Below, one piece after another: positions 1-53,249 of a DNA stretch of 64,000 bases. This stretch comes from Leucoraja ocellata (Eukaryota): contig JAWMAR010002559.1 in assembly GCA_036785375.1 (NCBI GenBank), forward strand, positions 1 to 64,000, given 5' to 3'. The notes below the pieces were generated by a model. The model was not told the origin of the DNA. It made no database searches and saw only the letters and a program-made list of their open reading frames with translations. The translations under genes were made by a program, and so were the position numbers. Each line of letters begins with the position of its first letter. Within the stretch, counting starts at the first letter, position 1.

Positions 1-215
1 TGGAACCAGAGCTCAGCGTATTCCACCCCCTCGCCACCCAAAGCTACTAGTGGAGTAGCTCCTCTAGTGACTTTGCTCGCCACTGTGCCCGGTGTCTCCG
101 CTGCTCAGTACCTCCTGCAGGTTGACGTACACGGCCGATTGCTCTTCCCCTCTCCAAGATTCCCCTCCTCCTTTCCGCTCCGCTGGGGCCGGCCCGTTCT
201 CTCCACTCCCGCGCT
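1..215 (-). pseudogene. Copy A terminal cytoplasmic exon (AVYVNL and VEYAEL ITIM), decayed
   Basis: cctttcctaccag acceptor; homologous to 37759-37911 but 1 nt shorter at the start and interrupted by the insertion at 39-75. VEYAEL codons at 26..9 are intact but out of frame. Confidence 0.8.
39..75. mobile_element. 37-bp TIR mini-element (CAAAG...CTTTG) with 8-bp target duplication CTCGCCAC
   Basis: Imperfect hairpin caaagctactagtggag / ctcctctagtgactttg; duplicated flanks at 30-37 and 76-83; empty site at 37771-37778. Confidence 0.8.
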
Positions 216-344
216 CTGGTAGGAAAGGGAAGCAGACGGGCAGTGTGGGTTTAGTACAGTGTGGCCCGGCATTTAATACCATCAGCGAGAAGGTTCACAA
301 CTCCTGAACTCCCGGAGACCCAGGTTCAGACATGTTGTTTATGT

Positions 345-575
345 TCTCCTCTCACACACACTCGCTCTCTCTCCTTCTCTCTCTCTCCACTTCCCCTCTC
401 TCTCTCTCCTCTTTCTCTCTCTCTCTCTGCTCTTCCTCTCTCACGCACTCTGTCTCTCACACTCGTAGTTTCACACTCTCTCTCTCCCCCTCTTGCACTG
501 TCTTCCTCTCTCAAACATTCTCTCACACTCACACCCCTCTCTCACACTACCTCACACTCTCTCACACACACTCAT
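345..575. repeat. (CT)n/(CA)n low-complexity tract (paralog ~38050-38300)
   Basis: Direct inspection. Confidence 0.9.
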
Positions 576-807
576 GAGGTTAGATAAATCAATATTCATA
601 CCCCCGGGTGCTAAATACTTTAATTCCCCTTCCCACACTGACCTTTTGTCCTCGGTCGCCTCCATGACAGAGTGAGGCTAAACACAAATTGGAGGACAGC
701 ATCACATATTCCCTTTGGGCAGCTTACAGCCCAGTGATATGACATTGATTTCCCTCACTTGAGGTAGCCCTGTATTCCCTCTCTCTCCATCCCTCCCCCC
801 CCAAGTA

Positions 808-1385
808 ATATATAATAATAATAATCTTTATTGTCATTGTACAAGACAACAACATTTTGTTGGAGCAGTCTCCAGCTGCCACAGGAATATGAGTATAAAA
901 TACGTTTAAAAAAGAACTATTAAAAAAATTAGACTCTAAACATATAGTAGTATGGGCGGGTGTGTGAGAGAGAGGGGGGGGGAGCAGTTGGGAGGGGATA
1001 GAGTTCAGTAATGTCACAGCTCTATGGTAGAAGCTGATTTTTAGTCTTGTCGTGCGGGCGCTCAGTGTCCTGTATCGTCTTCCTGAGGGCAGGGGGGGTG
1101 AAGAGGCAGTGTCCAGGGTGTGTGCTGTCTCTAATGATGCCCTTGACCCTCCGGATGCAGCAGGTCCGGTAGATGTCCTCCAGTCTGGGGGAGCTGGGTG
1201 CCAGTGATACTCTCCGCAGTCTTAATGACGCGTTGGAGAGCTTTCCTGTTCTCTGCGGTGCAGCCAGATTACCATACTGTGATGCAGTATGTGAGAACTG
1301 ACTCGATGGCTGACCTGTAGAAGCTCACCAGCAGCTGTTGTGGGAGACGTGCCCTCTTCAAGCACCTCAGGAAGTGAAGCCTTTG
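808..1385 (-). mobile_element. Rex1/Babar-like LINE 3' fragment, unit-1-specific
   Basis: Minus strand reads RLHFLRCLKRA...FYRSAIESVLTYCITVW; (TAA)n tail; absent at the paralogous site ~38535. Confidence 0.75.
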
Positions 1386-2074
1386 AAGTCGCACCAGCTT
1401 CTCGTTTTCACCCAACAAACCACTAACAGTGGCCTGTTTCCTTTATCATCGTTACTTTGTTTACATCTATCTTTCATTCATTGTTCTTTATCTCTCTCTA
1501 CATCATCGTCTATATAGAGTCATCCATTGTGGAAACAGGCCCTTCTGCCCAACTTGCCCACACCGGCCAACATGGCCCAGCTACACTAGTCCCACCTGCC
1601 TGCGCTTGGTCCATGTACCTTTCTAACTGTTTCTTAAACGTTGAATAGTCCCAGCCTCAACTACCTCCTCCAGCAGCACGTTCCATACACGCACCACCCT
1701 TTGTGTGAAAAAGTTACCCCTCAGATTTTTTTCCCCTTCACCTTGAACCTATGTCCTCTGGTCCTCGATTCCCCTACTCTGGGCAAGAGACTCTGTGCAT
1801 CTACCCGATCTATTCCTCTCATGATTATATACACATCTATAAGATCACCCCTCATCCCCCTGCGTTTCAAGGAATGGAGTCCCAGCCACCTCAACCTCTC
1901 CCTGTAGCTCAGGCCCCTCGAGTCTTGACCGAAACATCACCTGTTCCTTCTCGTCAGAGATTCTGCCTGTTCCACTGAGTTACTCCAGCTTTTGTACCCA
2001 CGTTTGTATCATCTATAGTTGGGATTAAATACAAAGTTCCACTACCTGATTGGTGGCAGAGTGTGGGCAGTAGA

Positions 2075-2111
2075 TCACATTGGTGTCTTGGTTTCCTGAA
2101 GCATCTTCCTC
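2075..2111 (-). CDS. Copy A cytoplasmic exon, coding part RKMLQETKTPM*
   Basis: The acceptor used in copy B (ctgtag) reads ctgttg here. The next AG (gctgcag) with phase 2 gives a short tail ending at TGA 2075-2077. The exon donor follows position 2046. Confidence 0.6.
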
Positions 2112-3775
2112 CTGCAGCAACAGAAGATCACACCAAGTTTACAGCACATCAGCAAAGTCCAAGTACAAAGTTGCAGTTGTATTAGACGTTGGTCATAAAG
2201 TCATGAGGTTATTAATGATAGGAGCAGAATTAAGTCATTCAGCCCATCAAGTCTACTCTGCATTCAATCATGGCTGATCTAACTCTTCCTCCTACGTACT
2301 GATGAATAACCCTATCTATCGTCTGCTTAAAAATATCCATTGACTTGGCCTCCACAGCCTGCTGCAACAAGGAATTCCACAAATTCACCACCCTCTGAAT
2401 AAAGAATATTCCACTCATCTGCTTCCTGAAGGAACGTCCCTTTAATTCTCAGACTATGACCTCTAGTCTAGACTCTCCCACTTGTGGAAACATCCTCCCC
2501 ACATATTCCGCTCAATCCAAGGCTTTCACTATTCAGTAACGTTTCAATGCATTTAGAGTATTGTGTTCCGTTCTGGGCACCATATTGTCGGGGAGATTTG
2601 TTCAAGCTCGTAGAAAGGGGTGCCGAGAAGATTTACGTGTAGATGTTGCCGAGGACTTCGAGGGCTTGAGCTACAGGGAGAGGATGAGCAAGGCGGCTTC
2701 TCCTATTCCTTGGAGCACAGGAGAGATGAAGGGGGTGATCTTATAGGCGGTGTTTTAAAATCATAGAGAGGAATAGATCAGGTAGACGCACAGAGCATCT
2801 TGCCCTCAGAGTGGGGAATCGTGTGGACCAGAGGACAGAGCTTTAAGGTGTGGGGGGGAAGATTCAATAGGAACCTCAGTGCTAACATTTTCACATAAAA
2901 GGGTAGTGGGTGTATGGAACGAGCTACCCGGAGGAAGTAGTTGAGCCAATGGGAGTAATGTTTAAGAAACATTAGGACAGGTACATGGATGGGACAGGTT
3001 TAGAGGTATATGGGACCAAAACGCAGGCAGGTTGGGGACTAGTGTAGATGGGTCATGTTGGCCGATATGGGCAAGTTGGGCGAAGGACCCATTTCCACTG
3101 TGTGACAACTACAAACAGGGGCCATTGAGTTTTCCAATTTCATGCAACTCCTGCTCTCCTTTCTTCCCCTCTCTCCACCCCACCCCTCCCCCACTCCTAG
3201 TCATCCTCCTAGTTCCACTGTTCGCATCCTTCTATTCTGTCTTTAGCACACCTTCCCCAGCCAGCAAAGGGGCCCATTGTGGGCTCCACCCATCATAAGT
3301 TCAAGGAACAGAATTACGCCATTCGGCCCATCAACTCTACTCCGCAATTCAATCATGGCTGATCCATCTCTCCCTCTCAACCCCATTCTCCTGCCTTCTC
3401 CCCATAACCCTGACTCCCGTACTGATCAAGAACCTATCTATCTCTGCCTTAACCATATTGATTGGCTTGGCCTCCACAGCCTTCCGTGGCAAAGAATTCC
3501 ACAGATTCACCACCCTATGACTGAAAAATTACTCCTGTTCTTCGTCCTTTAGGTAGTCCTTTTAATTCTAAGGCTGTGGCCTCTGGTCCCAGACTATCCC
3601 ACTACTGGAAACATCCTCTCCACATCCACTCTATCCAGGCCATTCACTATTCATTACATTTCAATGAGGTCCCCCCCTCATCCTTCTAAACTCCAGCTAG
3701 TACAGGCCCAGTAAGTGTCAAACGCTCATCATATGTTAACCATTCTCGTAAAAATGTGGATTTATATAAACTTAC

Positions 3776-3875
3776 GGCAGTATATACTTGTAGATGAAGA
3801 ATCCAGCTAGCACAGCGCTCAGTATTATTATCCCTGTTCTGAGCAAAACTTGCATCCAAATACTGAAGCTTTTAT
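3776..3875 (-). CDS. Copy A transmembrane exon, KSFSIWMQVLLRTGIIILSAVLAGFFIYKYILP
   Basis: ttcttacag acceptor (phase 1), CC|gtaagt donor (phase 2), hydrophobic helix with internal Arg (AGA 3838-3840). Confidence 0.85.
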
Positions 3876-5679
3876 CTGTAAGAACAACCAGAGGTGTGTT
3901 TTCAGTTTAATTTATTGTCATGTGTAACGAGGTACAGTGAAAGGCTTTTGTGTCGTGCTATCCAGTCAGCGGAAAGGCAACACATGTTTACAATCGAGCC
4001 GTCCACAGTGTACAGATACAGGACAAAGGGAATAACGTTTAGTGCAAGGTAAAGCCAGCAAAGACCGATCAAAGATAGTCTGAGGATCACCAATGAGGTA
4101 GATAGTAGTTCAGGACTGCTCCCTAATTGTGGTAGAATGGTTCTGTTGCCTGATAACAGCCGGGAAGAAACTGTCCCTGAATCTGGAGGTGTACGTTTTC
4201 ACACCAGTGGGCAAGAGGTACAGATCTCCCTGCCCCTCTCTCCCTCTCTCCCTCTCTGCCTCTCTCTGATCGTAGCTTGTCTTCTGACGTAGGTGCTGTC
4301 ATAGGTTGTCGCCAGGATGATGTAGGTTTACACCGGTGCTGACTAGTGAATTCCATTGGCGACTACCTACGCCAACCGGCGACAGGTGCTGGCGACTGAA
4401 TTATCCAGATGTCTTCAGTTGTCGCCGATAAGGTCGTGGACGTAGGTTGACTTCAGTTGTCGTAGGTTGTCGCCTGTGTGGTCGTAGGTTGTCGTAGTTG
4501 TGGTTGTAGGTGGACGTCCTAATGGGTCGCCGGTTGTCGTTAGCTTGATGTCGACTAGGTGTAGCTTGTCGTAGACATTGTCTTGTGATCAGGCCTCCAG
4601 GAAATTGTATCCCCCCCTATGTGTTAAAAGTGATTTCCGAGAAGAGGGAGTGGCCGGGGTGAGACTTGCCCTTGATAATGCTGCTGGCCTTGTCGAGGCA
4701 GCGTGAGGTGTAGATGGAGTCGATGGTAGGGAGGTTGGTTTGTGCGATGGTCTGGGCTGTGTCCACAACTTTATGTTATTTCTTGTGGTTAGCACACAAC
4801 TAAAGCTTTTCACTGTACCTCGGTACACGTGAAAATAAGCTAAACTGAACTAAACGAACCACAGATACACCTTGAACCATCCCACCACAACCAGAGAGCA
4901 GTGTTGAACTACTATCTACCTTATTGGTGACCCTCGGTCTATCCTTGATCGGACTTTACTGCCTTTACCTTGCACTAAACATTATTCCCTTATCATATAT
5001 GTAAACACTGTAAACAGCTTGATTGTAACCATGTACGGTCTGTACATTGACTGGTTAGCACACAACAAAAGCTTTTCACCGTAGCTCGGCGCACACATGA
5101 CAATAAACTAAACTGTAACGTAGTCATATAGTAGTGTATAAATCATGAGAGGATTAGATTGGGTAGATGCGCAGAGTCTCTTGCCCAGAGTAGGGGAATC
5201 GAACATCAGAAAACATAGGTTTGAGGTGAGGGGAAAAAGATTTAATAGGAATCTAAGGGGTAACTTTTTCACACAGATGGGTGTATGGAATGTGCTGCGA
5301 GAGGCAGTTGAGGCAGAGACTATCCCAACATTTACAAAACAGTTATACAGGTGCATGGATATGACTGGTTTGCAGGGATATGGACCAAGCACAGGCAGGT
5401 GGGACTAGTGTAGCTGGGGCATGTTTGCTGGTGTGGACAAGTTGGGCCAGAGGACCTGTTCCCACAATGTATCACTTTAACACTGTGAAAGGATGTTCAC
5501 ACGGATATGGGCCTGTTTTCATGCAATGTCACTATGACTCAATGATATCTTGCCTGCCGCAGATGTTAGTTTCTAGTTGTTGTGCAAGACGTTGGTGAGA
5601 CCGCATTTGAGGTATTGCGTCCAGTTTTAGTCACACTGCTCTAGGACGGAAGCTGGAAAGAGTGCAGAGAAGATTCATG

Positions 5680-8470: not shown

Positions 8471-9066
8471 CTGGCCATGTTGCCATCACTCGAGAATTAG
8501 ACAGGAACACGATGAGGTCAAGTTTGCAGGGGTAAAGGCCAAATGCAGGCAGGTGGGACTGGTGTAGGTGCGACATGTTGATTGGTGTGGACAAGTTGAG
8601 CCGAAGGGCCTGTTTCCACACGGTATGTGTAGGAGTCATTTATGTTTCGGCCAGCTACTGTTGGCATATTATATTAGTTTGTCTAGATATTTCTAGCGCT
8701 ATTATTTTGGACACTTGGTGGCGGTCATTTGATGAATGGAGGGGTGTAACACATGGGCTTAGTGGACAGGGAGTGATTCAGACCAGCTACAGGAGGTGGA
8801 GGGTACACAGTTCACACAGATCGGGAGGACAGGAAGTTACAACTTGTATGAGAATAAAGAGAACCTGGTACATTCATCACTTTGTTTGTACAACTACTTC
8901 AATAAAGAATGACTGGAAGATCTGTTCTGTTTTGGTCTGTGTAAGATCACTCCTACTTACCTGTGTAGTAATGGCAATGGAAAGTTGGACATTGTAAAAG
9001 TTAGAAATGGCCATTACAGTATGACCCTCTGGCTCTCTGACTTCCCTCGCCCATAAATGTCCTCAC

Positions 9067-9360
9067 CTTCCATCGACAGATACACCACGAACATGGCTTC
9101 CCCGTGCCGGTTTCGGACTGAGCACAAGGCCGTCACGTCCTCTCCTCCCCCACCCCCTCTCAGAGTGAGGGAGCCATTCACCAGATGCCCGCTTGCCACC
9201 TGCCAGGTGTGGAGACGTCCCTGGGTTTGATTTCCGCTGAGGTTGGAGAGGGAAAGTTGCCAGGTGAGCTCTCCGGGTGGGTTGCACCTGGCCGCACACA
9301 CACAGGTGACACTCTCAGGTGTGTGAGTGCATCCCGAATCCCGGGAAATCTCTGGCGCAT
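9067..9360 (-). pseudogene. Copy A membrane-proximal Ig4 exon, open frame but acceptor reads TG
   Basis: (Y)APEISRDSGCTHTPESVTCVCAARCNPPGELTW...ALCSVRNRHGEA, 294 nt, donor G|gtgagg. The C-x7-CxC pattern resembles the last Ig domain of MAG/CD33-related Siglecs. Preceded by ccctctccTG instead of AG. Confidence 0.75.
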
Positions 9361-11725: not shown

Positions 11726-11736
11726 ACCTCTTTTTT

Positions 11737-12040: not shown

Positions 12041-12521
12041 CCTCCTTAAAGCTCCTTATTGGTAATACTCTCTAAACTAGGCAGCGTTGTGCACCCTGAC
12101 CACATCCTTCCTGTAATGGGGTGACCAGAACTGCACACAATGCTTCAAATAATTTTATCTAATCTTCCTTATCCTAGAAGAGGAGAGAGGAAATATAGGA
12201 AGTATGTTGTCAAGCAGGAAAGGGTGCAGCGAAGATTCATGAGGATGTGGCCAGGACTAGAGGGCCTGAGCTATAGGGAAATGTTGAGCAGGCTGGGACT
12301 CTCTTCCTTGGAGAACAGGGGGATGAGCGGTGATCTTATAGAGGTGTTTAAAATCATGAGAGGAATAGATCGGGTAGATTCACCGAGTCTCTTGCCCAGA
12401 GTAGGTGAATCGAGGACCAAAGGACATAGGTTTGAGTGTGTGTGTTAGTGAATTCCAGCATCTCTCATGGGCCAATAAACCATCTGCCTTTACATAGACA
12501 TGACAGTGTGTGTCTACACAC

Positions 12522-13239
12522 ATTCTACAGTGAGGGTCACATCCCTCTCTGCTGTCCCATGGTCATTCTCCGCCACACATTGATAGACCCCAGCGTCCTT
12601 CCCTGTCAGCTGAGGGAATTGAAAAGACTAGGCTTGTATTCACTGGAGTTTAGAAGGATGAGGGGATATCTTATAGAAACATATAAAATTATAAAAGGAC
12701 TGGACAAGGTAGATGCATGAAAATGTTCCCAATGTTGGATGAGTCCAGAACCAGCACCACAGTCTTAGAACAAAGGGGAAGCCATTTAAGACTGAGGTGA
12801 GAAAAAACTTTTTCACCCAGAGAGTTGTGAATTTGTGGAATTCCCTGCCACAGAGGGAAGTGGAGGCCAAGTCACTGGATAGATTTAAGAGAGAGTTAGA
12901 TAGAGCTCTAGGGACTAGTGGAATCAAGGGATATGGGGAGAAGACAGGCACGGGTTATTGATTGGGGACGATCAGCCATGATCACAATGAATGGCGGTGC
13001 TGGCTCGAAGGGCCGAACGGCCACCTCCTGCACCTATTTTCTATGTCTATGTCTATGTCCATCCACAGCTCGTTGCTGGAACGTGTTGTGTTCAGCGTGA
13101 CACCGATGTCTCCACATCAGGTTAGACGCTGGGAAACTCTGGAGGGAGCAGAGGATCGCTGCAGAGTTTCCTTCCTTTATACTGACGCAGGAATTGTTCA
13201 CATTGTCGGGGGATGTGATTGAGAGATTCTGGGGGGCGT
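12522..13239 (-). pseudogene. Copy A disrupted Ig3 exon (frameshift plus CR1 insertion)
   Basis: 5' half 13057-13239: YAPQNLSITSPDNVNNSCVSIKEGNSAAILCSLQSFPASNLMWRH, frameshift ~13105, then GVTLNTTRSSNELWMD. 3' half 12522-12618: FPQLTGKDAGVYQCVAENDHGTAERDVTLTVE then gt. Confidence 0.9.
12619..13056 (+). mobile_element. 5'-truncated CR1 inserted in the Ig3 exon (paralog 48337-48772)
   Basis: LGLYSLEFRRMRG.LIETYKI, CR1 3'UTR and (CTATGT)n tail, flanked by contiguous Ig coding halves. Confidence 0.9.
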
Positions 13240-14120: not shown

Positions 14121-14414
14121 ATTCCACAGTCAGTGGGAGGATCTGCTCCGATGACACAGTTGGGTATGTGACTCTGCAGGTGAGGTTTTGCCCGTGATGT
14201 TTGAGCGCTGGGGTCAGGGACAGAACAGAAGTATATGTCAGAGTGTCACCCTGCTGAGTTACGCTGTGTGAGGCTGACGGTGGTTCATCAGCGGGGGTGA
14301 CCCAGGTTAAGGTGGGTGCCGTTCCATCACACGTGGTGTTGAAGGAGCAGGTCATGTTCACAGGCTTTCCTGCCACCAATTCAGCAGGGAATATCGTGGG
14401 TTTATCCGTGAAAT
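14121..14414 (-). CDS. Copy A C2-set Ig exon (98 codons)
   Basis: tgtgttag acceptor, T|gtaagt donor. DFTDKPTIFPAELVAGKPVNMTCSFNTTC...LTW...HHGQNLTCRV...LTVE, typical Siglec domain 2 with the extra Cys. Confidence 0.93.
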
Positions 14415-14870: not shown

Positions 14871-15239
14871 CAGTAACACTGAGCTTTGTTACAGGGTGGT
14901 AGTTGTAAACATCTCCCCCATCGAATTCAACTCTGAACAAATAAGGACCTGCATCTTGCTGCGTGACGTTGTCTATGACCAGGGAACAGTCGTTGTCTAT
15001 CAGGATTCCTGACAGCCGGGTCCGATGCTGAAACTTTGTTGATTCTAGACTGTGATCCCCGGAGTGGAAGGCTACAGGACCTTTGTTGGTGTGCGACCAA
15101 CTGTTAAACCAGATTCCAGTCCGTGGTTTACTGTTCAGTCCCGACGGGTACGTGTAGTTACACGGAATCCGTGCACACAAACCGTTCTGCGCTGTCACAG
15201 CTCCGGGAATGTCCGCTCTCCACTCTCCCGACATCACGG
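14871..15239 (-). CDS. Copy A Siglec-type V-set Ig exon (123 codons)
   Basis: ttctctcctcag acceptor, G|gtaagt donor, phase 1-1. Siglec signatures GLCARIPC, NDCSL, and DAGPYLFRVE with the F-strand Arg (AGA 14932-14934). Confidence 0.93.
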
Positions 15240-15373
15240 CTGAGGAGAGAAGGAACAATCTTTAGCAGTGAACACCCTGTCAGTTCACTGGACTTTCCAC
15301 ACCGTTTATCCTGCGCTGTGGACCCGGTGTGAACAGAGCGTAGAAGAGCAGCATGGTGGCGTAGTGGTAGAGT

Positions 15374-15541
15374 CTCCCTCCTCACCGCCCCTCCCCCAGT
15401 GCATCACTCCCTCCTCACCGCCCCTCCCCCAGTGCATCACTCCCTCCTCACCGCCCCTCCCCCAGTGCATCACTCCCTCCTCACCGCCCCTCCCCCAGTG
15501 CATCACTCCCTCCTCACCGCCCCTCCCCCAGTGCATCACTC
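15374..15541. repeat. 33-bp minisatellite, 5 perfect units, in the leader-V intron
   Basis: Unit ctccctcctcaccgcccctcccccagtgcatca. Confidence 0.95.
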
Positions 15542-15575
15542 CCCGTAAACACTTCTGAGTTGCTGCTGATGGTAC

Positions 15576-15615
15576 CTTGGAGAAGGGAGAGGAGGAAGAA
15601 CGATCTCCCGATCAT
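15576..15615 (-). CDS. Copy A signal-peptide exon, MIGRSFFLLSLLQ(A)
   Basis: ATG at 15615 (acaATG), hydrophobic core, phase-1 donor AAG|GTACC. Acceptor ctttctcttccag opens the exon at 15657. Joins the V exon as ...LLQAVMSGEW. Confidence 0.85.
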
Positions 15616-22470: not shown

Positions 22471-22494
22471 TTTACTACTGTCATCACTATAACT

Positions 22495-33200: not shown

Positions 33201-33203
33201 TTC

Positions 33204-37463: not shown

Positions 37464-37758
37464 TCAATATTTACCCGCGGAAGTCTGGGTTCTAAAGAAC
37501 AAAGGCTTTTTTAAAGAGATACAGCGGGAAAACAGGCCCTTCAGCCCACCGAGTCCGCACCGACCATCGGTCATCCGTTCACACACTAGTTCTATGTTAT
37601 CCCACTATTTCATCTACAGAGGGTTAATTAATCTATGAAACCCAAGGTAGTTAAGGCTGGTGCAGCGCTCTCTCCCCATCGCCTCTCCCTCCTCACCACC
37701 CTTCCCTCCATCCTCCCACCTACCCCTTCCCCTGCTTGGACTGGAACCAGAGCTCCGC

Positions 37759-37911
37759 CTATTCCACCCCCTCGCCACTGTGCCCGGTGGCTCCGCTGCT
37801 CAGCACCTCCTGCATGTTGGCGTACACGGCCGATTGCTCTTCCCCCTCGCCTGATTCCCCTCCTTCTTTCCGCTCCACTGGGGCCGGCCCGTTCTCCCCA
37901 CTCCCCGCGCT
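37759..37911 (-). CDS. Copy B terminal exon, SAGSGENGPAPVERKEGGESGEGEEQSAVYANMQEVLSSGATGHSGEGVE*
   Basis: ccctttccttccag acceptor, phase 0. TAG at 37759-37761 sits where copy A has TAC (ITIM Tyr). The frame continues AELWFQSKQGKG to TAG at 37720-37722. Confidence 0.8.
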   Translation of the reverse strand, partial: SAGSGENGPAPVERKEGGESGEGEEQSAVYANMQEVLSSGATGHSGEGVE

Positions 37912-39194: not shown

Positions 39195-39267
39195 CTGATT
39201 GGTGGCAGATTGTGGGCAGTAGATCACATTGGTGTCTTGGTTTCCTGAAGCATCTTCCCTCCAGCAG
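39195..39267 (-). CDS. Copy B cytoplasmic exon, (H)CWREDASGNQDTNVIYCPQSATNQ
   Basis: cttctgtag acceptor (phase 2) and CAG|gtagtg donor (phase 0) link the TM and terminal exons in frame. Confidence 0.72.
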
Positions 39268-40174: not shown

Positions 40175-40271
40175 TGCAGTATATACTTGTAGATGATGAA
40201 TCCAGTTAGCACAGCCACCAGTATTATCCTTGCTGTAAGCAAAACTGCCTTCCAAATACTGAAGCCTTTAT
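40175..40271 (-). CDS. Copy B transmembrane exon, KGFSIWKAVLLTARIILVAVLTGFIIYKYIL(H)
   Basis: tttttacag acceptor, CA|gtaagt donor, internal Arg (AGG 40228-40230). Confidence 0.85.
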
Positions 40272-43977: not shown

Positions 43978-45159
43978 TACTTATTGAAAGTCTAGGTACA
44001 CTACATCCACTGGCTCTCCCTTGTCCATTTTCCCAGTTACATCCTCAAAAAATTCCAGAAGATTAATCAAGCATGATTTCCCCTTCATAAATCAATGTGA
44101 CTCCGACTGATCCTGTTACTGCTATCCAAATGTGCCGCTATTTCATCTTTTATAATTGACTCCAGCACCTTCCCCACCACCTATGTCACACTAACTGGTC
44201 TATAATTCCTTGTTTTCTCTCTCAAACCATGCTTAAAAAGTGGAAAAACATTATCTACCTTCCAATCCACAAGAACTGATCCTGAATCTATAGAACATTG
44301 GAAAATGATCACCAATGCGTCCACAATTTCTTGAGCCACTTCCATAAGTACCCTGGGATGCAGGTCATCAGGCCCTGGGGATTTATCAGCTTCAGTCCCA
44401 TCTGTCTACCCAACACCATTTCCTGTCTAATGTGAATTTCCTTCAGTTCCTCCGTCATCCAAGATCCTCTGGCCATGTTGCCATCACTCGAGAATTAGAC
44501 AGGAACACGATGAGGTCAGGTTTGCAGGGGTATGGGCCAAATGCAGGCAGGTGGGACTGGTGTAGGTGTGACATGTTGGTTGGTGTGGGCAAGTTGGGCT
44601 GAAGGGCCTGTTTCCACACGGTATGTGTAGGAGTCATTTATGTTTCGGCCAGCTACTGTTGGCATATTATATTAGTTTGTAGCATCCTGGACAATACAGC
44701 TCACCCCCTCCGTGACACATTGGTCAACCTGAGGAGCACATTCAGCAACAGACTGGTTCCACCAAGATGCAGGACAGAACGCCACAGGAGATCCTTCTTC
44801 CCTGTGGCTATCAAACTGTACAACTCCTCCCCATTCTGTCGTAGTGTAGACTGAGACTGACTCGCCTCCCCACCACACCCCTCCCACGTAATCTTTGCAC
44901 AGTCCCCAAGCCTTTCCACTCGTCACTTTAATTTCATATTTAAAGTATTTTGTGTTTGTGTATTTTGTGTATTTAGTTCTCTCCTGGGATATATACAGTT
45001 CTATTGTGTCGTATCGTATTGTAAAAGTTGCCCCGCACATCTCCTTTACAATTTTCCCCTCTCACCTTAAAGCTCTGCCCTCTCAACCTTGACATTTGCA
45101 CCATGTGAAAAAGATTCTGACTGTCTACCTTCTCAATGCAACTCATAGTTTTATATATT

Positions 45160-45625
45160 TGTTTTTAAATCTCTGAATGGGCTCGCCCCGCCTTACCTCT
45201 CTGAGCTGCTCCACCCATACGCTCCTGCCCGGTCCCTCAGGTCAGCTGGTTAGCTGCTCCTGGAGGTAACGAGGTCTAGTCGGAGGCTCAGAGGGGATAG
45301 AGCCTTCTCTGTTGCTACTCCGGCACTCAGGAACACCCTGCCGTTGCACATCAGACAGGCCCCCTCGCTGCCCATCTTCAAATCCAGTGTTAAAACACAT
45401 TTGTACTCCCTGGCTTTTGACCATGCCTGAGACTTTGCTTCTGTTTTTGGTGTTTTTGATGTTTCTTTATTTTACATGTCTTTTCCTACTATTTCTTTTG
45501 ATTGTTATTTTTGGTGCGTATTAACTTTTTTGTCAATGATTAGTGATGTACAACACTTTGTTGCAGCTATGTTTGTTTTTAAAGTGCTCTATAAATAAAA
45601 TTATTATTATTATTATTATTATTAT
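45160..45625 (+). mobile_element. L2-like 3' fragment with (ATT)n tail, unit-2-specific
   Basis: FKSLNGLAPPYLSELL...RSLRS...GDRAFSV...FKS.VKTHL; absent at ~10545 and ~47180. Confidence 0.8.
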
Positions 45626-48239
45626 ATTTCTATCAGGTCTCCCGTCAGCCTTTCAACTGGGTGGTGAATCTGTGGAATTCTTTGCAACAGACGGCAGTGG
45701 AGGCCAAGTCAGTGGTTATATTTAAGGCAGAGATAGATAGATTCTTCATTAGTACGGGTGTCAGAGGCTATGGGGTGAAGGCAGGGGAATGGGGCAGGGG
45801 AGGGAGAATTAGATCAGCCATCATCGAATGGCAGAGTAGACTTGATGGGCCGAATGGGCCCTTGGCAGTGTGTTGCGGATGCTCTCCATGGTTAAACAGT
45901 TTACCAGGGAGTACAAGTACCTTATACAAATATCACCAGTCTGAAGAAAGGTCTCACCCCAAAATGTCACCTATTCCTTCCCTCCAGAGATGCTGCCTGT
46001 CCCGTTGAGTTACGCCAGCATTGCAATAACCAACCTGATCTCCCAGTGGCTCAGCACTTCAACTCTTCCTCACATTCCAAATCCAACCTCTCTGTCCTGG
46101 GCCTCCTCCATGGCCAGAGTGAGGCCCACCGTAAATTGGAGGAGCAGCACCTCATATTTCGCTTGGGCAGTTTACACCCCAGCGGTATGAACATTGACTT
46201 CTCTAATTTCAGGTAGTCCCGGCTTTTTCCTCTCCTTCCCAGCTCTCCCTCAGCCCACAGTCTCCTCCTCTTCCTATCTTCTTCCCGCCCCCATCCTCCT
46301 ATCAGTCTGAAGGGTCTCGACCCGAAACGTTGCCTATTTCCTTCACTCCATAGATGCTGCCTCACCCGCCGAGTTTCTCCAGCATTGTCTGCTCCAGCAT
46401 TTTGTGTCTATCTTCAGTAAACGGGACTGATCCAAGAACTCTGAGGCCCTGTACAAGAAGGGACAGAGCTTTCTGAGAAGGCTCCGCTCCTTCAACATCT
46501 GCAGCAAGAAGCTGCAGATGTTCTACTAACGGTGGTGACCAGTGCCATCTTCTTCGCTGCCGTGTGCCGGGGCAACAGGGCGAAGGCTGCAGATGCCAAT
46601 GGGATCAACAAGCTCATCAGGAAGGCCGGCTCCATCCTGGGGGCGGAGTTGGATTCACGGGAGGTTGGTCTTGGAGGGGAGGATGCTCCTCAAACTGTGG
46701 AGCATCCTGAACAATACAGCTCACCCCCTCCGTGACACATTGGTCAACCTGAGGAGCACATTCAGCAACAGACTGGTTACACCAAGATGCAGCACAGAAC
46801 GCCACAGGAGATCCTTCTTCCCTGTGGCTATCAAACTGTACAACTCCTCCCCCTTCTGTCATAGTGTAGACTGAGACTGACTCGCCTCCCCATCGCCCCC
46901 CTCCCATGTAATCTTTGCACAGCCCCCAAGCCTTTCCACTCGTCACTTTAATTTCATATTTCAAGTATTTTGTGTTTGTGTATTTTGTGTATTTAGTTCT
47001 CTCCAGGGATATATAAAGTTCCATTGTGTCGTATCGTATTGTAAAAGTTACCCCGCACATCTCCTTTACAATTTTCCCCTCTCACCTTAAAGCTCTGCCC
47101 TCTCAACCTTGACATTTGCACCATGTGAAAAAGATTCTGACTGTCTACCTTCTCAATGCAACTCATAGTTTTATATATTTCTATCAGGTCTCCCCTCAGC
47201 CTTTCAATTGGGTGGTGAATCTGTGGAATTCTTTGCCATAGACCGCAGTGGAGGCCAAGTCAGTGGTTATATTTAAGGCAGAGATAGATGGATTATTGAT
47301 CAGTACGGGTGTCAGAGGCTATGGGGTGAAGGCAGGGGAAGGGGAGGGAGAAATAGATCAGCCATGATCGAATGGCAGAGTAGACTTGATGGGCCGAATG
47401 GCCTTATTGTGCTCCCATCACTTATGAACATGAACTCCAGAGAAAGTCTATCCAACCTCTTCTTTAGTTTAGTTTAGAGATACAGCGCGGAAACAGGCCC
47501 TTCGGCCCACCGTGTCCACGCAGACCAGCGATCCCGACACATATACTATCCTGCACACACTAGTGACAATTTACAAATATACCAAGCCAATTAACCTGCA
47601 CACCTGTATATCTTTGGAGTGTGGGAGGAAACCGGAGCACCCGAAGAAAACCCACGTAGGTTATGGGATGAACTTGCCAACTCCGTACCGACAAGCACCC
47701 GTAGTGAGGATTCAACCTGGCTCTCTGGTGCTGTGAGGCAGCAACTCTACCGTTGAACCACTGTGTGCCCCCCTTAAAACTCCTTATTGGTAATACTCTC
47801 TAAACTAGGCAGCGCTGTGCACCCTGACCACATCCTTCCTGTAATGGGGTGACCAGAACTGCACACAATGCTTCAAATAATTTTATCTAATCTTCCTCAT
47901 CTTAGAAGAGGAGAGAGGAAATATAGGAAGTATGTTGTCAAGCAGGAAAGGGTGCAGCGAAGATTCATGAGGATGTGGCCAGGACTAGAGGGCCTGAGCT
48001 ATAGGGAAAGGTTGAGCAGGCTAGAACTCTCTTCCTTGGAGAACAGGGGGATCTTATAGAGGTGTTTAATATCATGAGAGGAATAGATCGGGTAGATTCA
48101 CCGAGTCTCTTGCCCAGAGTAGGTGAATCGAGGACCAAAGGACATAGGTTCGAGTGTGTGTGTTAGTGAATTCCAGCATCTCTCATGGGCCAATAAACCA
48201 TCTGCCTTTACATAGACATGACAGTGTGTGTCTACACAC

Positions 48240-48955
48240 ATTCTACAGTGAGGGTCACATCCCTCTCTGCTGTCCCATGGTCATTCTCCGCCACACATTG
48301 ATAGACCCCAGCGTCCTTCCCTGTCAGCTGAGGGAATTGAAAACACTAGGCTTGTATTCACCGGAGTTTAGAAGGTTGAGGGGATATCTTATAGAAACAT
48401 ATAAAATTATAAAAGGACTGGACAAGGTAGATGCATGAAAAATGTTCCCAATGTTGGGCGAGTCCAGATCCAGGGGCCACAGTCTTAGAATAAAGGGGAA
48501 GCCACTTAAGACTGAGGTGAGAAAAAAAAATTTCACCCAGAGAGTTGTGAATTTGTGGAATTCCCTGCCACAGAGGGAAGTGGAGGCCAAGTTACTCGAT
48601 GGATTTAAGAGAGAGTTAGAGCTCTAGGGGCTAGTGGAATCAAGGGATATGGGGAGAAGACGGGCACGGGTTATTGATTGGGGACGATCAACCATGATCA
48701 CAATGAATGGCGGTGCTGGCTCGAAAGGCCGAATGGCCTCCTCCTGCAACTATTTTCTATGTCTATGTCTATGTCCATCCACAGCTCGTTGCTGGAACGT
48801 GTTGTGTTCAGCGTGACACCGATGTCTCCACATCAGGTTAGACGCTGGGAAACTCTGGAAGGAGCAGAGGATCGCTGCAGAGTTTCCTTCCTTTATACTG
48901 ACCCAGGAATTGTTCACATTGTCGGGGGAAGTGATTGAGAGATTCTGGGGGGCGT
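48240..48955 (-). pseudogene. Copy B disrupted Ig3 exon
   Basis: Halves at 48773-48955 and 48240-48336, with the same frameshift and the same CR1 insertion site as copy A. Confidence 0.9.
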
Positions 48956-49837
48956 CTGCAAACAGATAAAATTCAACAACTAGTTTTGCGGCACTTTCGG
49001 TGTCCCTTGTAAAAGACTTTAGTCTTCAGACTGTAGAGATACACTGCGGAAATAGGCCCTTCAGCCCACGGAGTCCGCGCCAACCATCGATCACACATTC
49101 ACACACTAGTTCTATGTTTAGGGAAATGAGAGATATAGACGATGGTGTAGAGACATATAGAACAAAGAATGAAAGATATGCAAAAAGTTAACGATGATAA
49201 AGGAAACAGGCCGTTGTTAGCCGTTTGTTGGGTGAGAACGAGAAGCTGATGAGACTTGGGTGGGGGAGGGATGGAGAGAGAGGGAATGCCGGGGCTACCT
49301 GAAGTTAGAGAAATCAATATACATACCACTGGGCTGTAAACTGCCCAAGCAAAATATGAGATGCTGATCCTCCAATTTGCATTTAACCTCACTCTGACAA
49401 TGGTGGTGTCCGAGGACAGAAAGTTCAGTGTGGGAATGGGAAGGAGAATTAATGTGTTTAGCAACCAGGAGATCAGGTAGGTCATACATCTCTCTACATC
49501 ATCGTCTATATCTCTCGTTTCCCTTTTCTGGAACTTTCAGTCTGAAGAAGGCTCTCGACCCGAAACGTCACCCATTCCTTCTCTCCAGAGATGCAGCCTG
49601 TCCTGCTGAGTTTCTCCAGCTTTTGGTGTTGATTTGATTAGTACAGGTGTCAGAGGATATAGGGAGAAGGCAGAAGAAAGGGGTTAGGAGAGAGAGATTG
49701 ATCAGCCATGATTGAATGGCAGAGTAGAGTTGATGGGCTGAATGGCCTAATTCTGTACCTATCGTCTATGACCTTATATACCAGCACTGCTAATAGATTA
49801 TTGATGTTCCTGCACAATAAACGATCTCCGTACTTAC

Positions 49838-50131
49838 ATTCCACAGTCAGTGTGAGGGTCTGCTCCGATGACACAGTTGGGTATGTGACTCTGCAGGTGA
49901 GGTTTTGTCCGTGATGTTTGAGCGCTGGGGTCAGGGACAGAACAGAAGTATATGTCAGAGTGTCACCCTGCTGAGTTACGCTGTTTGAGGCTGACGGTGG
50001 TTCATCAGCGGGGGTGACCCAGGTTAAGGTGGGTGCCGTTCCATCACACGTGGTGTTGAAGGAGCAGGTCATGTCCACAGGCTTTCCTGGCACCAATTCA
50101 GCAGGAAATATCGTGGGTTTATCCGTGAAAT
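49838..50131 (-). CDS. Copy B C2-set Ig exon
   Basis: 294 nt, AG/GTAAGT, 5 aa differences from copy A. Confidence 0.93.
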
Positions 50132-50587
50132 CTAACACACAGAGAAACAAATACTGTTAGTTAAATATCACTGGATACATCGGTTCACATTGAAATCCCA
50201 GTCCCACACGAGCAAGGATGTTTTTACAAGGTATAGAAGTGTGAAAACGCACACCTCCAGATTAAGGGACAGTTTCTTCCCAGCTGTTATCAGGCAACTG
50301 AATCATCCTACCACAACCAGGGAGCAGTCCTGAACTACAATCTGCCTCAGCAGAAAGACTATACATGATTGCAATCGAGCCATTTGCAGTGTATGGATAC
50401 ATGCTAAGAGAATAACGTTTAGTGCAAGGTAAAGCCAGCAAAGTCCAATCAAGGATAGTCCGATGGGTCACCAGTGAGGTCGACAGTAGTTCAACACTGC
50501 TCTCTGGTTGTGGTAGGATGGTTCAGTTGCCTGATAACAGCTGGGAGAAACTGTTGAGTGAAATAGTGAATTATACAGAGCAATTAC

Positions 50588-50956
50588 CAGTAACACCGAG
50601 CTGTGTTGCAGGGAGGTAGTTGTACTTATTTCCCCCTCCGAAATCAACTTTGAAAAAATAAGGACCTGCATCTTGCGGCGTGACGTTGTCTATAACCAGG
50701 GAACAGTCGTTGTCTATCAGGATTCCTGACAGCCGGGTCCGATGCTGAAACTTTGTTGATGCTAGACTGGGATTCCCGGAGTGGAAGGCTACAGGACCTT
50801 TGTTGTCGTACGACCCACTGTTAAACCAGATTCCAGTCCGTGGTTTATTGTTCAGATCCGACGGGTACGTGTAGTGACACGGAATCCGTGCACACAAACC
50901 ATTCTGCGCTTTCACAGCTCTGGGATTCCATGCACCCCACTCTCCCGACATCACGG
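50588..50956 (-). CDS. Copy B Siglec-type V-set exon with essential Arg>Lys
   Basis: 369 nt, phase 1-1, donor G|gtaatt. GLCARIPC and NDCSL retained; DAGPYFFKVD with AAA at 50649-50651. Confidence 0.93.
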
Positions 50957-51090
50957 CTGAGGAGAGAAGGAACAATCTTTAGCAGTGAACACCCTGTCAG
51001 TTCACTGGACTTTCCACACCGTTTATCCTGCGCTGTGGACCCGGTGTGAACAGAGCGTAGAAGAGCAGCATGGTGGCGTAGTGGTAGAGT

Positions 51091-51795
51091 CTCCCTCCTC
51101 ACCGCCCCTCCCCCAGTGCATCACTCCCTCCTCACCGCCCCTCCCCCAGTGCATCACTCCCTCCTCACCGCCCCTCCCCCAATGCATCACTCCCTCCTCA
51201 CCGCCCCTCCCAGAATGCATCACTCCCTCCTCACCACCCCTCCCACAGTGCATCACTCCCTCCTCACCGCCCCTCCCAGAATGCATCACTCCCTCCTCAC
51301 CACCCCTCCCACAGTGCATCACTCCCTCCTCACCGCCACTCCCACAATGCATCACTCCCTCCCACAGTGCATCACTCCCTCCTCACTGCCCCTCCCCCAG
51401 TGCATCACTCCCTCCTCACCACCCCTCCCACAGTGCATCACTCCCTCCTCACCGCCACTCCCACAATGCATCACTCCCTCCCACAGTGCATCACTCCCTC
51501 CTCACCGCCCCTCCCCCAGTGCATCACTCCCTCCTCACCGCCCCTCCCAGAATGCATCACTCCCTCCTCACCGCTCCTCCCACAATGCATCACTCCCTCC
51601 CACAATGCATCACTCCCTCCTCACTGCCCCTCCCCCAGTGCATCACTCCCTCCTCACCGCCACTTCCACAGTGCATCACTCCCTCCTCACCACCCCTCCC
51701 ACAGTGCATCACTCCCTCCTCACCGCCACTCCCACAATGCATCACTCCCTCCCCCAGTGCATCACTCCCTCCTCACCGCCCCTCCCCCAGTGCAC
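51091..51795. repeat. 33-bp minisatellite expanded to roughly 20+ variant units
   Basis: Same unit with substitution variants and shortened units. Confidence 0.95.
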
Positions 51796-51834
51796 CATTC
51801 CCCGTAAACACTTCTGAGTTGCTGCTGATGGTAC

Positions 51835-51874
51835 CTTGGAGAAGGGAGAGGAGGAAGAACGATCTCCCGATCAT
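51835..51874 (-). CDS. Copy B signal-peptide exon
   Basis: Same peptide as copy A. ATG at 51874, donor AAG|GTACC, exon opens at 51916. Confidence 0.85.
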
Positions 51875-53249
51875 TGTCCGATCCCAGATATCCCGTCAGT
51901 TACCCGATCTCCCGGTCTGGAAGAGAAAGTTATTGCAGTAAAACTCCAGCGACCAATATACATTAAGCAACATGGATGCAATGCTGAGGCTCTATGAGGC
52001 GCTGGTGAGGCCACATTTGGAATATTGTGAGGAATTTTGAGCCCCGCATCTGATGAAGGATGTGGTGACTCTGGAGAGGGTCCAGAGGAGGTTTACAGGA
52101 ATGGTCCCAGGAATGAGTGTGTTTACATATGAGAGTGTTTATCAGCACTAGGTCTGTACTAGCTGGAGTTTAGAAGAATGAGGGAGGACCCCATTGAAAC
52201 CTACGGAATAGTGAAAGGCTTGGATAGAGTGGATGTGGAAAGGACTTTTCCACTGCTGGGAGGGTCATAGCCTCAGAATTCAACGTTGTTCTAGGAAGGA
52301 GAAGAGGAGGAATTTCTTTAGTGAGAGGGTGGTGAATCTGTGGAATTCTTTGCCACTGAAGGCTGTGGCGGCCCAGTCAGTGGATATTGTTGAGGCAGAG
52401 AAAGATAGATTGTGAATTTGTCCGGGTGTCAGGGGTTATAGGCAGAAGGCAGGAGAATGGGATTAGTAGGGAGAGATGGATCAGCCATGATTAAAAGGTG
52501 GAGTAGATTTGATGGGCTGAATGGCCTAATTCTGCTCCTATCACATGTCTGTAAATATCACCAACAGCATACGCTGCACCAACTACATTGAAGCTGTGGT
52601 CAATAAAGCAACTGATGTCTCATCTTGCTCAAAAGATGAAGGAAGTTCAGCATTTCTCCAGTGACTCACACCAACTTCTCCACATGAACTGTGAAAGAAC
52701 ACGGTTAGGTTGCATTACACTTTGGTTTGGGACCAGCTCTGCCCAAGACCACAAGAAGTTGGTCAGAGCTTAGTTTAGTTTAGAGATACAGCACAGAAAC
52801 AGGCTCCCACGGCCCACAGACCATGCCGACCACTTCACACACTAGTTCTGTGTTTACTTTTTGAGATACAACATGGAAACTGGACCTTTACCCCACCGTG
52901 CCCGCATCGACCATCGATCACCCGTTCACACACTAGTTCTGTGTTTAGTCTAGAGATACAGCGTGGAAACAGGCCCTTCGACCCATCGAGTCTGTGCCGA
53001 CCAGCGATCCCCCGCCCACTAACACGATCCTACACACGCTAGGGACAATTTACAATGTTGCCAAGCCAATTAGCCTACAAACCTGCACGTCATTGGAATG
53101 AAGGGGGAAGGGATGTGAGGGGAGGGGGTATGTGGGGTTGCGTGGCTAGGGGGTGTCGTGTGGGTAGGGGAGGGCGTGTGTGTGAGTGTGGGGGTGTGTG
53201 GGGGAGGGGGTGTGTGTGGGGGAGGGGGTGTGTGGGGGGGGTGAGTGTG

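What the first reader, a model, noticed from the sequence alone, without database searches (positions are those of the whole stretch)
1..51916. Two tandem Siglec-like paralogs apparently converted in parallel from inhibitory 4-Ig to activating-type 2-Ig receptors
Seen: a reconstructable leader-V-C2-Ig3-Ig4-TM-tail gene with a VEYAEL ITIM. Each copy has separately lost Ig4 (A: acceptor TG; B: deletion), lost the ITIM (A: acceptor shift plus insertion; B: Tyr>stop) and carries a TM Arg at a different codon. Leader, V, C2 and TM exons stay open with good splice sites. Established: activating paired receptors have a basic TM residue and no ITIM (Siglec-14/16 with DAP12; LILRA, GPVI and OSCAR with FcR-gamma). 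Inference: three kinds of lesion pointing the same way in both copies suggest selection for activating or decoy receptors in a probable cartilaginous fish. Whether this is already described could not be checked.
Basis: partly seen in the sequence, partly recalled or inferred. Interest (0 to 1): 0.92.

Follow-up and report, generated by a model that had tools for sequence, protein, structure and literature searches.

The report
Skate Siglec-like gene pair lacking ITIM
Two neighbouring copies of a skate immune-receptor gene have each lost their inhibitory signalling motif and gained a charged membrane residue, which may make them activating receptors or may just be decay.

Summary

**What is there**
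- Two minus-strand tandem copies, A (1-15615) and B (37723-51874), differ by about 3.6% outside exons.
- Leader, V, C2 and TM exons are open in both, with canonical splice sites.

**Inherited, not parallel**
- Both copies carry the same frameshift and LINE insertion in Ig3.
- Amblyraja radiata models show that dead exon too. One (XP_032870526) is a 2-Ig receptor, C2 joined to a neutral TM, with an intact ITIM.

**Independent in each copy**
- TM Arg: codon 12 in A, codon 14 in B.
- ITIM loss: a 1-nt deletion in A (not an acceptor shift); TAC>TAG in B.
- Ig4 loss: acceptor TG in A, deletion in B.

**Selection not shown**
- C2 dN/dS is 0.86.
- The excess V divergence is largely variants shared with other paralogs.
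- Open frames are not beyond chance (P=0.23).
- Chance TM basic residues in both: about 0.13.
- B has lost the essential Arg.
- Two RNA runs gave no V or C2 reads (weak test).

Activating-type offshoots (0.45) against decaying pseudogenes (0.40). The scan noted a similar copy just beyond this window (s1-884663).

The parts
15576..15615 (-). Copy A leader exon (MIGRSFFLLSLLQ, phase 1)
   Evidence: Read. Boundaries. tblastn to the leaders of family models. 0 of 40 differences from B.
15374..15543 (.). 33-nt minisatellite in the leader-V intron of A, 5.2 copies
14871..15239 (-). Copy A V-set exon. The essential Arg codon AGA lies at 14934-14932.
   Evidence: Pfam V-set E=2.8e-08. The top 18 of 24 PDB matches are Siglecs, and the Arg aligns with the FR of MAG and Siglec-8. 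Codon.
14121..14414 (-). Copy A C2-set exon, donor GAAT|gtaagt
   Evidence: Pfam C2-set_2 E=1.7e-09..
13054..13239 (-). Copy A dead Ig3 exon, first part. The acceptor is intact and there is a frameshift near 13106-13110.
   Evidence: tblastn hits change frame there. Sequence. The same reading 'NLMWRHRCHAEHNTFQQRAVDGHRHRHRK' occurs in A. radiata P0158.
12631..13051 (.). Retrotransposon 3' fragment inserted in the Ig3 exon of A
   Evidence: 81.7% match to 5676-6095, which overlaps an ORF with Pfam RVT_1. The CR1 class was not tested.
12520..12624 (-). Copy A Ig3 exon, second part (LTGKDAGVYQCVAENDHGTAERDVTLTVE), donor kept
9067..9360 (-). Copy A Ig4 exon. The frame is open and the donor is GT, but 'tg' (9362-9361) stands where the AG acceptor should be. 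An AG 9 nt further in would give T|AG after C2.
   Evidence: Read. tblastn to P0013 and P0021. P0185 has 'YAPEISWDSGCTHTPESVTCVCAARCNPPGELTW'.
3776..3875 (-). Copy A TM exon (KSFSIWMQVLLRTGIIILSAVLAGFFIYKYIL). Arg codon AGA at 3840-3838.
2046..2111 (-). Copy A first cytoplasmic exon. The ancestral acceptor is kept. A 1-nt deletion gives RKMLQETKTPM*, with TGA at 2078-2076.
   Evidence: Outgroup 'ILRREDASGNQ' in P0160 and P0203.
1..215 (-). Copy A last exon, cut by the window start. It has a second 1-nt deletion near its start and a 46-nt insertion at 38-83. AVYVNL is present, and the TAC of VEYAEL lies at 20-18.
51835..51874 (-). Copy B leader exon
51091..51802 (.). The same 33-nt minisatellite in B, expanded to about 21 copies
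50588..50956 (-). Copy B V-set exon. Lys codon AAA (50651-50649) stands at the essential Arg position.
   Evidence: Pfam V-set E=2.3e-09..
49838..50131 (-). Copy B C2-set exon
48770..48955 (-). Copy B dead Ig3 exon, first part, with the same frameshift as A
48238..48342 (-). Copy B Ig3 exon, second part, behind the same insertion
   Evidence: 0 of 105 differences from A.
40175..40271 (-). Copy B TM exon (KGFSIWKAVLLTARIILVAVLTGFIIYKYIL). Arg codon AGG at 40230-40228.
39195..39267 (-). Copy B first cytoplasmic exon (CWREDASGNQDTNVIYCPQSATNQ). It uses a new acceptor 6 nt upstream of the lost ancestral one, in frame.
37723..37911 (-). Copy B last exon (SAGSGENG...AVYANMQEVLSSGATGHSGEGVE*). TAG at 37761-37759 replaces the ITIM Tyr, and the old frame runs on to KQGKG*.

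Best explanation
A and B are two members of a tandem array of CD33/MAG-like Siglec-type receptor genes in a skate.

Shown:
- The array's founder had already lost its third Ig exon, through a frameshift and a retrotransposon insertion.
- After the A/B duplication each copy independently lost the distal ITIM. A has a 1-nt deletion that ends the protein 12 residues after the TM exon. B has a nonsense codon at the ITIM tyrosine.
- Each copy gained one Arg in the outer half of the TM helix.
- Each copy lost Ig4.

Inferred:
- The founder was read as a 2-Ig (V-C2) inhibitory receptor, with C2 spliced straight to the TM exon.
- A and B are ITIM-less, TM-charged offshoots of that inhibitory template. 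They would be candidate activating partners in a paired-receptor array.
- They would be made by leader-V-C2-TM splicing and would reach the surface and signal by pairing the TM Arg with the TM Asp of an ITAM adaptor.
- A is the better candidate: essential Arg kept, short tail. B (Arg>Lys, long tail) may already be drifting.

This reading is only slightly ahead of plain pseudogene decay.
For: - Leader, V, C2 and TM exons are open, with AG/GT sites in both copies.
- The C2>TM junction codon and exon order equal those of the annotated A. radiata model P0160.
- The TM Arg is absent from all relatives with this TM exon: 0 of 6, and none in P0160, P0203, P0185 or P0209. It sits at two different codons two residues apart.
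- A's stop lies 30 nt before the end of the penultimate exon. By the recalled 50-nt rule it should escape nonsense-mediated decay. B's stop is in the last exon.
- B's lost acceptor is replaced by one 6 nt upstream that keeps the frame.
- The three V-domain cysteines are kept in both copies, and the essential Arg in A.
- Shark Siglec-like models with a TM Arg and short tails exist (P0025, P0006), so the kind occurs in elasmobranchs.
- Passages of PMC13358205 describe the paired-receptor pattern: long ITIM tail against short tail, gene duplication, gene conversion.
Against: - No RNA support. In runs X22 and X23, depth was 0 on the V exon and at most 0.45 on C2. About 5% of each run was read, the tissue is unknown, and the species may not be the window's own.
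- No near-identical product of A's V exon is in the protein collection. The best of 2 hits is 81% identical.
- Open frames are not beyond chance. 1.48 frame-breaking indels are expected in leader+V+C2, giving P(0)=0.23.
- The dead Ig3 pieces are at least as well kept: 3 of 289 differences.
- C2 dN/dS is 0.86.
- Unique V changes (5 in A, 8 in B) are near the neutral rate. They hit sites invariant in all 15 relatives compared: T15K and R102K in B, Q118K in A.
- 10.4% of nonsynonymous single-base changes in the TM core give Arg or Lys. A basic residue in both copies therefore has a chance of about 0.13.
- The TM block as a whole is more diverged (88.7%).
- A's TM also gained Gln and Ser.
- No adaptor was examined.
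Confidence: 0.45

Rival explanations
1. Both copies are pseudogenes drifting within a birth-and-death array. Once the ITIM was lost, or even before, nothing maintained them. The TM arginines are two of many neutral replacements. The exons look intact because little time has passed and because gene conversion from working paralogs keeps exons alike.
For: - Zero RNA depth on the V exon and at most 0.45 on C2.
- P(0 frame-breaking indels) is 0.23.
- The known-dead Ig3 exon is the best-conserved part (3 of 289 differences).
- C2 dN/dS is 0.86.
- 12 of 25 V differences are variants shared among paralogs, the mark of conversion.
- B has changed invariant sites, including the essential Arg.
- The chance of a TM basic residue in both copies is about 0.13.
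- A's tail carries three frame-breaking lesions, and Ig4 is disabled or deleted.
Against: - All lesions spare the leader-V-C2-TM path in both copies.
- Both arginines lie at similar depth in the helix.
- B's acceptor replacement is in frame.
- Neither stop should trigger nonsense-mediated decay.
- The RNA test was weak.
Confidence: 0.4
2. The copies are expressed mainly as secreted or truncated V-C2 decoys. C2 would splice into the intact acceptor of the dead Ig3 exon and stop inside the insertion. In A it could instead splice into the inner AG of Ig4, which gives T|AG.
For: - The Ig3 acceptor 'tttgcag' is intact in both copies.
- A. radiata model P0158 (two accessions) is exactly such a product and ends in ...HRHRK*.
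- The inner AG in A's Ig4 was read.
Against: - Such stops lie far upstream of later junctions and should trigger decay, unless a poly-A site follows.
- The models may be predictions without reads.
- No reads fell on Ig3a: depth at most 0.55 in 13050-13249.
- B cannot bind sialic acid in the usual way if Lys replaces the Arg.
Confidence: 0.08
3. A and B are not two loci. They are two haplotypes or a mis-assembly laid in tandem.
For: An N gap lies at 53250-53449, just beyond B. Receptor clusters are hard to assemble.
Against: - A and B lie in one gap-free stretch, 1-53249.
- They differ by 3.6% plus different insertions and a 21-kb spacer.
- Neighbouring notes describe further copies (unchecked).
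Confidence: 0.03

Closest known systems
Amblyraja radiata XP_032870526.1 (P0160, 'CD33-like', 350 aa)
   Same: It has the same exon order: leader-V-C2-TM-two tail exons, with C2 joined to TM by the same Tyr codon. C2 is 93-94% identical, the TM exon 75% (A) and 87% (B), and the tail exons 76-95%.
   Different: Its TM is neutral (LLTAGIIL) and its tail is intact, with VVYANL and LEYAELWF. Its V domain is only 80-83% identical. It is a gene model, and I did not see its RNA support.
Primate paired Siglecs (Siglec-5/14, Siglec-11/16)
   Same: An inhibitory ITIM receptor and a neighbouring ITIM-less relative carry a basic TM residue. The V domain evolves fast and undergoes gene conversion. Sources: passages of PMC13358205 and the abstract start of PMC4042635.
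   Different: In primates the ectodomains are kept nearly identical and DAP12 coupling is proven. Here the V domains are 75-84% alike, the TM charge arose by point mutation within the same exon, and no adaptor or transcript is shown.
Recurrent formation of activating KIR/Ly49 from inhibitory homologues (recalled, no paper read)
   Same: The route is the same: a point mutation to a TM charge plus truncation of the tail, repeated independently, often followed by decay.
   Different: It is a different receptor family in mammals. This comparison rests on recall only.
Arg-mutated Siglecs (for example human Siglec-XII)
   Same: B has Lys at the critical sialic-acid-binding Arg. [quoted passage not shown]
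   Different: The functional consequence was not tested here. The human example is recalled.
Shark Siglec-like models with a TM Arg (XP_072409577.1 Chiloscyllium punctatum; XP_072326180.1 Scyliorhinus torazame)
   Same: Both have Siglec-like V domains, a TM 'ILILGIRAGIFIV' with Arg followed by x-G-I as in A's 'LLRTGII', and tails of 13 and 31 residues.
   Different: They use a different TM exon type, have many Ig domains, and their V domains are only 46-49% identical.

Membership tests
Siglec (sialic-acid-binding Ig-like lectin) family | N-terminal V-set domain homologous to Siglec V-sets, followed by C2-set domains | tested here: met
   Pfam V-set and C2-set_2 pass their cut-offs. Ig_CD22 scores 26.1 and 24.5 bits, just under its 27-bit cut-off. 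The 18 best of 24 PDB sequence matches are Siglecs. Relatives are named Siglec, CD33-like or MAG-like by NCBI.
Siglec (sialic-acid-binding Ig-like lectin) family | Conserved Arg on strand F that binds the sialic-acid carboxylate | tested here: inconclusive
   A is met: AGA aligns with the FR of MAG and Siglec-8. B is not met: AAA gives Lys, while all 15 relatives compared have Arg.
Siglec (sialic-acid-binding Ig-like lectin) family | Three V-domain cysteines (GLC, IPC, DCS) and three C2 cysteines, for the intra-sheet and inter-domain bonds | tested here: met
   They are present in both copies in the translations. Their pairing is inferred from recalled Siglec structures.
Siglec (sialic-acid-binding Ig-like lectin) family | Binding of sialylated glycans | not testable with these tools
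   This needs Fc-chimera or glycan-array assays.
Activating, adaptor-coupled member of a paired-receptor set | Basic residue inside the TM helix | tested here: met
   Arg at TM-exon codon 12 in A and codon 14 in B. Relatives have Thr and Gly there.
Activating, adaptor-coupled member of a paired-receptor set | Short cytoplasmic tail without ITIM | tested here: inconclusive
   A is met in silico, with a stop 12 codons after the TM exon. B has lost the distal ITIM but keeps about 75 tail residues with VIYCPQ and VYANM.
Activating, adaptor-coupled member of a paired-receptor set | An inhibitory partner with a near-identical ectodomain in the same genome | tested here: inconclusive
   None lies in the window. 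The closest ITIM-bearing relatives are A. radiata models, with V 80-84% and C2 93-95% identical. Neighbouring DNA could not be fetched.
Activating, adaptor-coupled member of a paired-receptor set | Association with an ITAM adaptor (DAP12, FcR-gamma) | not testable with these tools
   No adaptor gene was looked for. The literature search returned no paper holding the shark or cartilaginous terms among the 12 listed.
Activating, adaptor-coupled member of a paired-receptor set | Expressed, correctly spliced mRNA | tested here: inconclusive
   Depth was 0 on V and at most 0.45 on C2 in 2 RNA runs. Only about 5% of each run was read, the tissue is unknown, and the species is uncertain.
Pseudogene | Disabling lesion on every possible coding path | tested here: not met
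   The leader-V-C2-TM-tail path is open to a stop codon in both copies, each exon translated on its own. Only Ig3, and Ig4 in A, are disabled.

The most novel reading that the evidence does not exclude
The window catches the recurrent de novo birth of activating Siglec-type receptors from a 2-Ig inhibitory template in a skate. Neighbouring copies, two here and perhaps a third just beyond the window, would each have hit a different TM codon and a different tail lesion. If so, the paired-receptor logic and TM-Arg coupling to ITAM adaptors already shaped Siglec-like arrays at the base of the jawed vertebrates.
Probability: 0.3. Interest if true: 0.7.

Novelty: new member of a known kind. Interest (0 to 1): 0.4.

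Why it matters
Paired inhibitory and activating receptors are a recurring outcome of host-pathogen conflict in mammals. If these skate copies work, they would show the same route in a Siglec-like family of a cartilaginous fish: a point mutation to a TM charge plus loss of the tail. They would come with a ready-made natural series of ITIM-bearing relative, copy A and copy B for testing adaptor coupling. If they are pseudogenes, the locus is an ordinary case of birth-and-death turnover. It then mainly warns that lesions pointing the same way can arise by drift in a family with dozens of copies.

Tried and rejected
**Parallel 4-Ig to 2-Ig conversion.** Rejected. The Ig3 lesions are identical in A and B and occur in A. 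radiata models.

**Positive selection on the V exon.**
- First impression: 36 of 366 differences against 3.6% outside exons, dN/dS 1.9, with the excess confined to the exon.
- Weakened. 12 of the 25 replacements are variants that recur in other paralogs, which points to mosaic exchange by conversion. Only 13 are unique.

**Excess divergence of the TM exon.** 14 of 97 positions differ. The whole block is only 88.7% identical, so this is not clearly specific to the exon.

**Open frames as evidence of constraint.** Not significant. The dead Ig3 exon serves as an internal control.

**A second, short-tail type of TM exon inside these genes.** Not found. The only hit was on the plus strand at 46520-46588 with E=0.032.

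**A TM-Arg relative with the same TM and tail among annotated proteins.** Only 3 proteins were returned and all are neutral or carry Glu.

**Transcript evidence.**
- I laid 4 of the 24 listed runs.
- Reads fell on repeat-derived parts only, on both strands.
- Contigs from X5 cover intron as well, so X5 is probably DNA.

**Literature.**
- Searches found no paper on elasmobranch activating or paired Siglecs. For those papers I saw search listings and abstract starts only.
- For PMC13358205 I saw passages only.
- PMC3015071 is not held.
- Supplements are closed. Those of the whale-shark (PMC8455134) and little-skate (PMC10115646) genome papers might list Siglec-family expansions that I could not see.

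**Species.** Not settled. The closest models are from Amblyraja radiata and Leucoraja erinacea. B's intron read-through matches the L. erinacea model P0168 at 60 of 62 residues.

Full report
**Layout**

The window holds two tandem copies of one gene on the minus strand.
- A self-comparison aligns A (76-17000) with B (37771-52902).
- The V/C2 block is 96.0% identical (11723-15543 against 47452-51260).
- The first tail exon region is 95.9% identical.
- The TM block is only 88.7% identical and the last-exon block 85.0%.
- Outside exons, 321 of 8829 aligned positions differ (3.64%), with 31 indel events, 27 of them not a multiple of three.
- The 21-kb spacer and the introns are full of retroelement remains, with RVT_1 ORFs.
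- An N run lies at 53250-53449 and was left alone.

**Exons**

tblastn used 11 of the first 150 homologs and 11 further relatives. Family exons appeared only in A and B.

| Exon | Copy A | Copy B |
|---|---|---|
| Leader | 15615-15576 | 51874-51835 |
| V | 15239-14871 | 50956-50588 |
| C2 | 14414-14121 | 50131-49838 |
| Ig3, part 1 | 13239-13054 | 48955-48770 |
| Ig3, part 2 | 12624-12520 | 48342-48238 |
| Ig4 | 9360-9067 | absent |
| TM | 3875-3776 | 40271-40175 |
| First tail exon | 2111-2046 | 39267-39195 |
| Last exon | 215-1 | 37911-37723 |

- Leader, V, C2 and TM have AG acceptors and GT donors in both copies.
- Each of these exons is open when translated on its own.

**What family it is**

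- Pfam gives V-set and C2-set_2 above their cut-offs, and Ig_CD22 just below its cut-off.
- The 18 best of 24 solved-structure matches of the V exon are Siglecs: MAG, Siglec-8, sialoadhesin, CD33, Siglec-10, Siglec-5, Siglec-7 and Siglec-15. A's Arg aligns with their ligand-binding Arg.
- A full HMMER scan found 1006 proteins at E up to 0.001.
- The closest named proteins are ray and skate models that NCBI calls Siglec, CD33-like or MAG-like. The nearest are from Amblyraja radiata and Leucoraja erinacea.
- B's intron read-through matches an L. erinacea model at 60 of 62 residues.
- The window therefore comes from a skate or a close relative. The species itself is not settled.

**The key comparison: four A. 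radiata models**

| Model | Architecture |
|---|---|
| P0158 | Reads from C2 into exactly the dead Ig3 text seen here (...NLMWRHRCHAEHNTFQQRAVDGHRHRHRK*) |
| P0203 | Carries the same broken Ig3 start joined into Ig4, with a neutral TM and VEYAEL |
| P0160 | Leader-V-C2 joined directly to a neutral TM (KSFSIWKAVLLTAGIILMAVLAGFIIYKYIL), with an intact tail (VVYANL ... LEYAELWF) |

- In the window, the Ig3 frameshift and the retroelement insertion are letter-for-letter alike in A and B.
- So Ig3 was lost once, before the duplication.
- The 2-Ig product is predicted for an ITIM-bearing relative.
- The 4-Ig to 2-Ig part of the claim is therefore inheritance, not parallel change.

**What is independent in the two copies**

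1. TM arginine.
   - A reads LLRTGII (codon 12, AGA) and B reads LLTARII (codon 14, AGG), where relatives read LLTAGII.
   - None of 6 TM homologs among the first 150 proteins has a charged core. Neither does P0160 or P0203.
   - P0185 and P0209 carry a Glu instead.
2. ITIM loss.
   - Judged by 'ILRREDASG' in the relatives, A keeps the ancestral acceptor of the first tail exon.
   - A lacks one G, which gives PRKMLQETKTPM and a stop at 2078-2076.
   - A's last exon has a further 1-nt deletion and a 46-nt insertion before VEYAEL.
   - B then runs through a normal tail to TAG at the ITIM tyrosine, 37761-37759.
3. Ig4.
   - In A the exon is open but preceded by 'tg'.
   - In B the segment is absent.

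**Is it more than chance?**

- The V exon differs at 36 of 366 positions, with dN 0.119, dS 0.062 and a ratio of 1.9. The excess stops at the exon borders.
- Polarising the 25 replacements with 8 close relatives gives 12 variants that recur among paralogs, 5 unique to A and 8 unique to B. Much of the excess therefore looks like exchange between paralogs.
- The unique changes are near the neutral rate. They include sites invariant in all 15 relatives compared: T15K and R102K in B, Q118K in A.
- C2 has 7 of 291 differences and a ratio of 0.86.
- The dead Ig3 pieces differ at 3 of 289 positions with no indel. Good preservation here is therefore no sign of constraint.
- In the V/C2 block, 1.48 frame-breaking indels are expected in leader+V+C2, so P(0)=0.23.
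- In the TM core, 10.4% of nonsynonymous single-base changes give Arg or Lys. With 3 changes in B and 5-6 in A, both copies gaining one has a chance of about 0.13.
- Taken together the pattern is unlikely for one pre-chosen pair. It was picked, however, from a genome in which the scan already holds 32 notes that mention Siglec.

**Transcripts**

- No listed run holding the stretch is on record as RNA.
- I laid 9250-15249 on two oligo-dT RNA runs and two contig sets.
- Depth was 0 on the V exon in all four runs and at most 0.45 on C2 in the RNA runs.
- Coverage fell on repeat-derived parts only, equally on both strands.
- About 5% of each RNA run was read, the tissue is unknown, and the runs carry another species code than the best DNA holders. 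This is weak negative evidence.
- The protein collection holds no near-identical product of A's V exon. The best of 2 hits is 81% identical.

**Reading**

- The outline fits an activating offshoot of an inhibitory receptor: a basic TM residue, no ITIM, a kept ectodomain, and stops placed where decay of the mRNA is not expected (rule recalled). This fits A best.
- B has lost the ligand-binding Arg and keeps a long tail. Its proximal motif has become YANM. That resembles the YxNM of DAP10 and CD28 by recall, which was not tested.
- Shark Siglec-like models with a TM Arg and short tails show that the kind exists in elasmobranchs.
- The rival reading, drift in a birth-and-death array, explains the neutral rates, the hits at invariant sites and the silence in RNA.
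- I put the activating-type reading at 0.45, decay at 0.40, truncated secreted forms at 0.08 and an assembly artefact at 0.03.

**Novelty**

- Paired receptors, and their recurrent birth from inhibitory genes, are well known (passages; KIR/Ly49 by recall).
- My searches found nothing in print on such Siglec-type pairs in cartilaginous fishes (listings only, supplements closed).
- This is a new member of a known kind, with function unproven.
- First-reader notes on the same genome describe a similar copy 1916 letters beyond the window.

Noticed in passing
window 15374-15543 and 51091-51802: A 33-nt minisatellite in the leader-V intron has 5.2 perfect copies in A and about 21 degenerate copies in B. 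Its plus-strand translation (PLPQCITPS...) also ends the L. erinacea 'Siglec 5' model P0016, which suggests that model runs into such a repeat.
   Followed up: partly
proteins P0185 (A. radiata) and P0209 (Rhinoraja longicauda): The ITIM-bearing multi-Ig relatives carry a Glu inside the TM helix (IILIAELAG), conserved in two species. An acidic TM residue in an inhibitory-tailed receptor is unexplained.
   Followed up: no
window 37911-37759 (B last exon): B's proximal tyrosine motif reads VYANM, where relatives read VYANL or VYSNL. That makes a YxNM motif of the DAP10/CD28 type, by recall.
   Followed up: no
window 50956-50900 (start of B V exon): B's N-terminus SGEWGAWNP resembles mammalian MAG (SGHWGAWMP in 5lf5) more than its own paralogs (EWSADNP or EWRADTP). 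The Trp is unique to B among the 15 relatives compared.
   Followed up: partly
proteins P0163, P0164, P0169 (skates): Another branch of the family ends in a different TM exon with a 5-residue tail (…VIVWAACFRNK). Short-tailed members therefore already exist by a separate route.
   Followed up: no
window 44678-45160 and 46303-47435: Where B lacks Ig4, it carries a second copy of the segment equal to A 10062-10545 (97% identical). That points to a rearrangement rather than a simple deletion.
   Followed up: partly
window 7085-7974 and 42806-43972: G/T-rich low-complexity tracts give long spurious ORFs on both strands. They are homologous between A and B at only 88% identity.
   Followed up: no
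window 9250-15249, run X5: Contigs of a run guessed to be RNA cover intron next to Ig3a (13158-13435, 7 other letters). The run is more likely DNA from a close relative or a paralog.
   Followed up: partly
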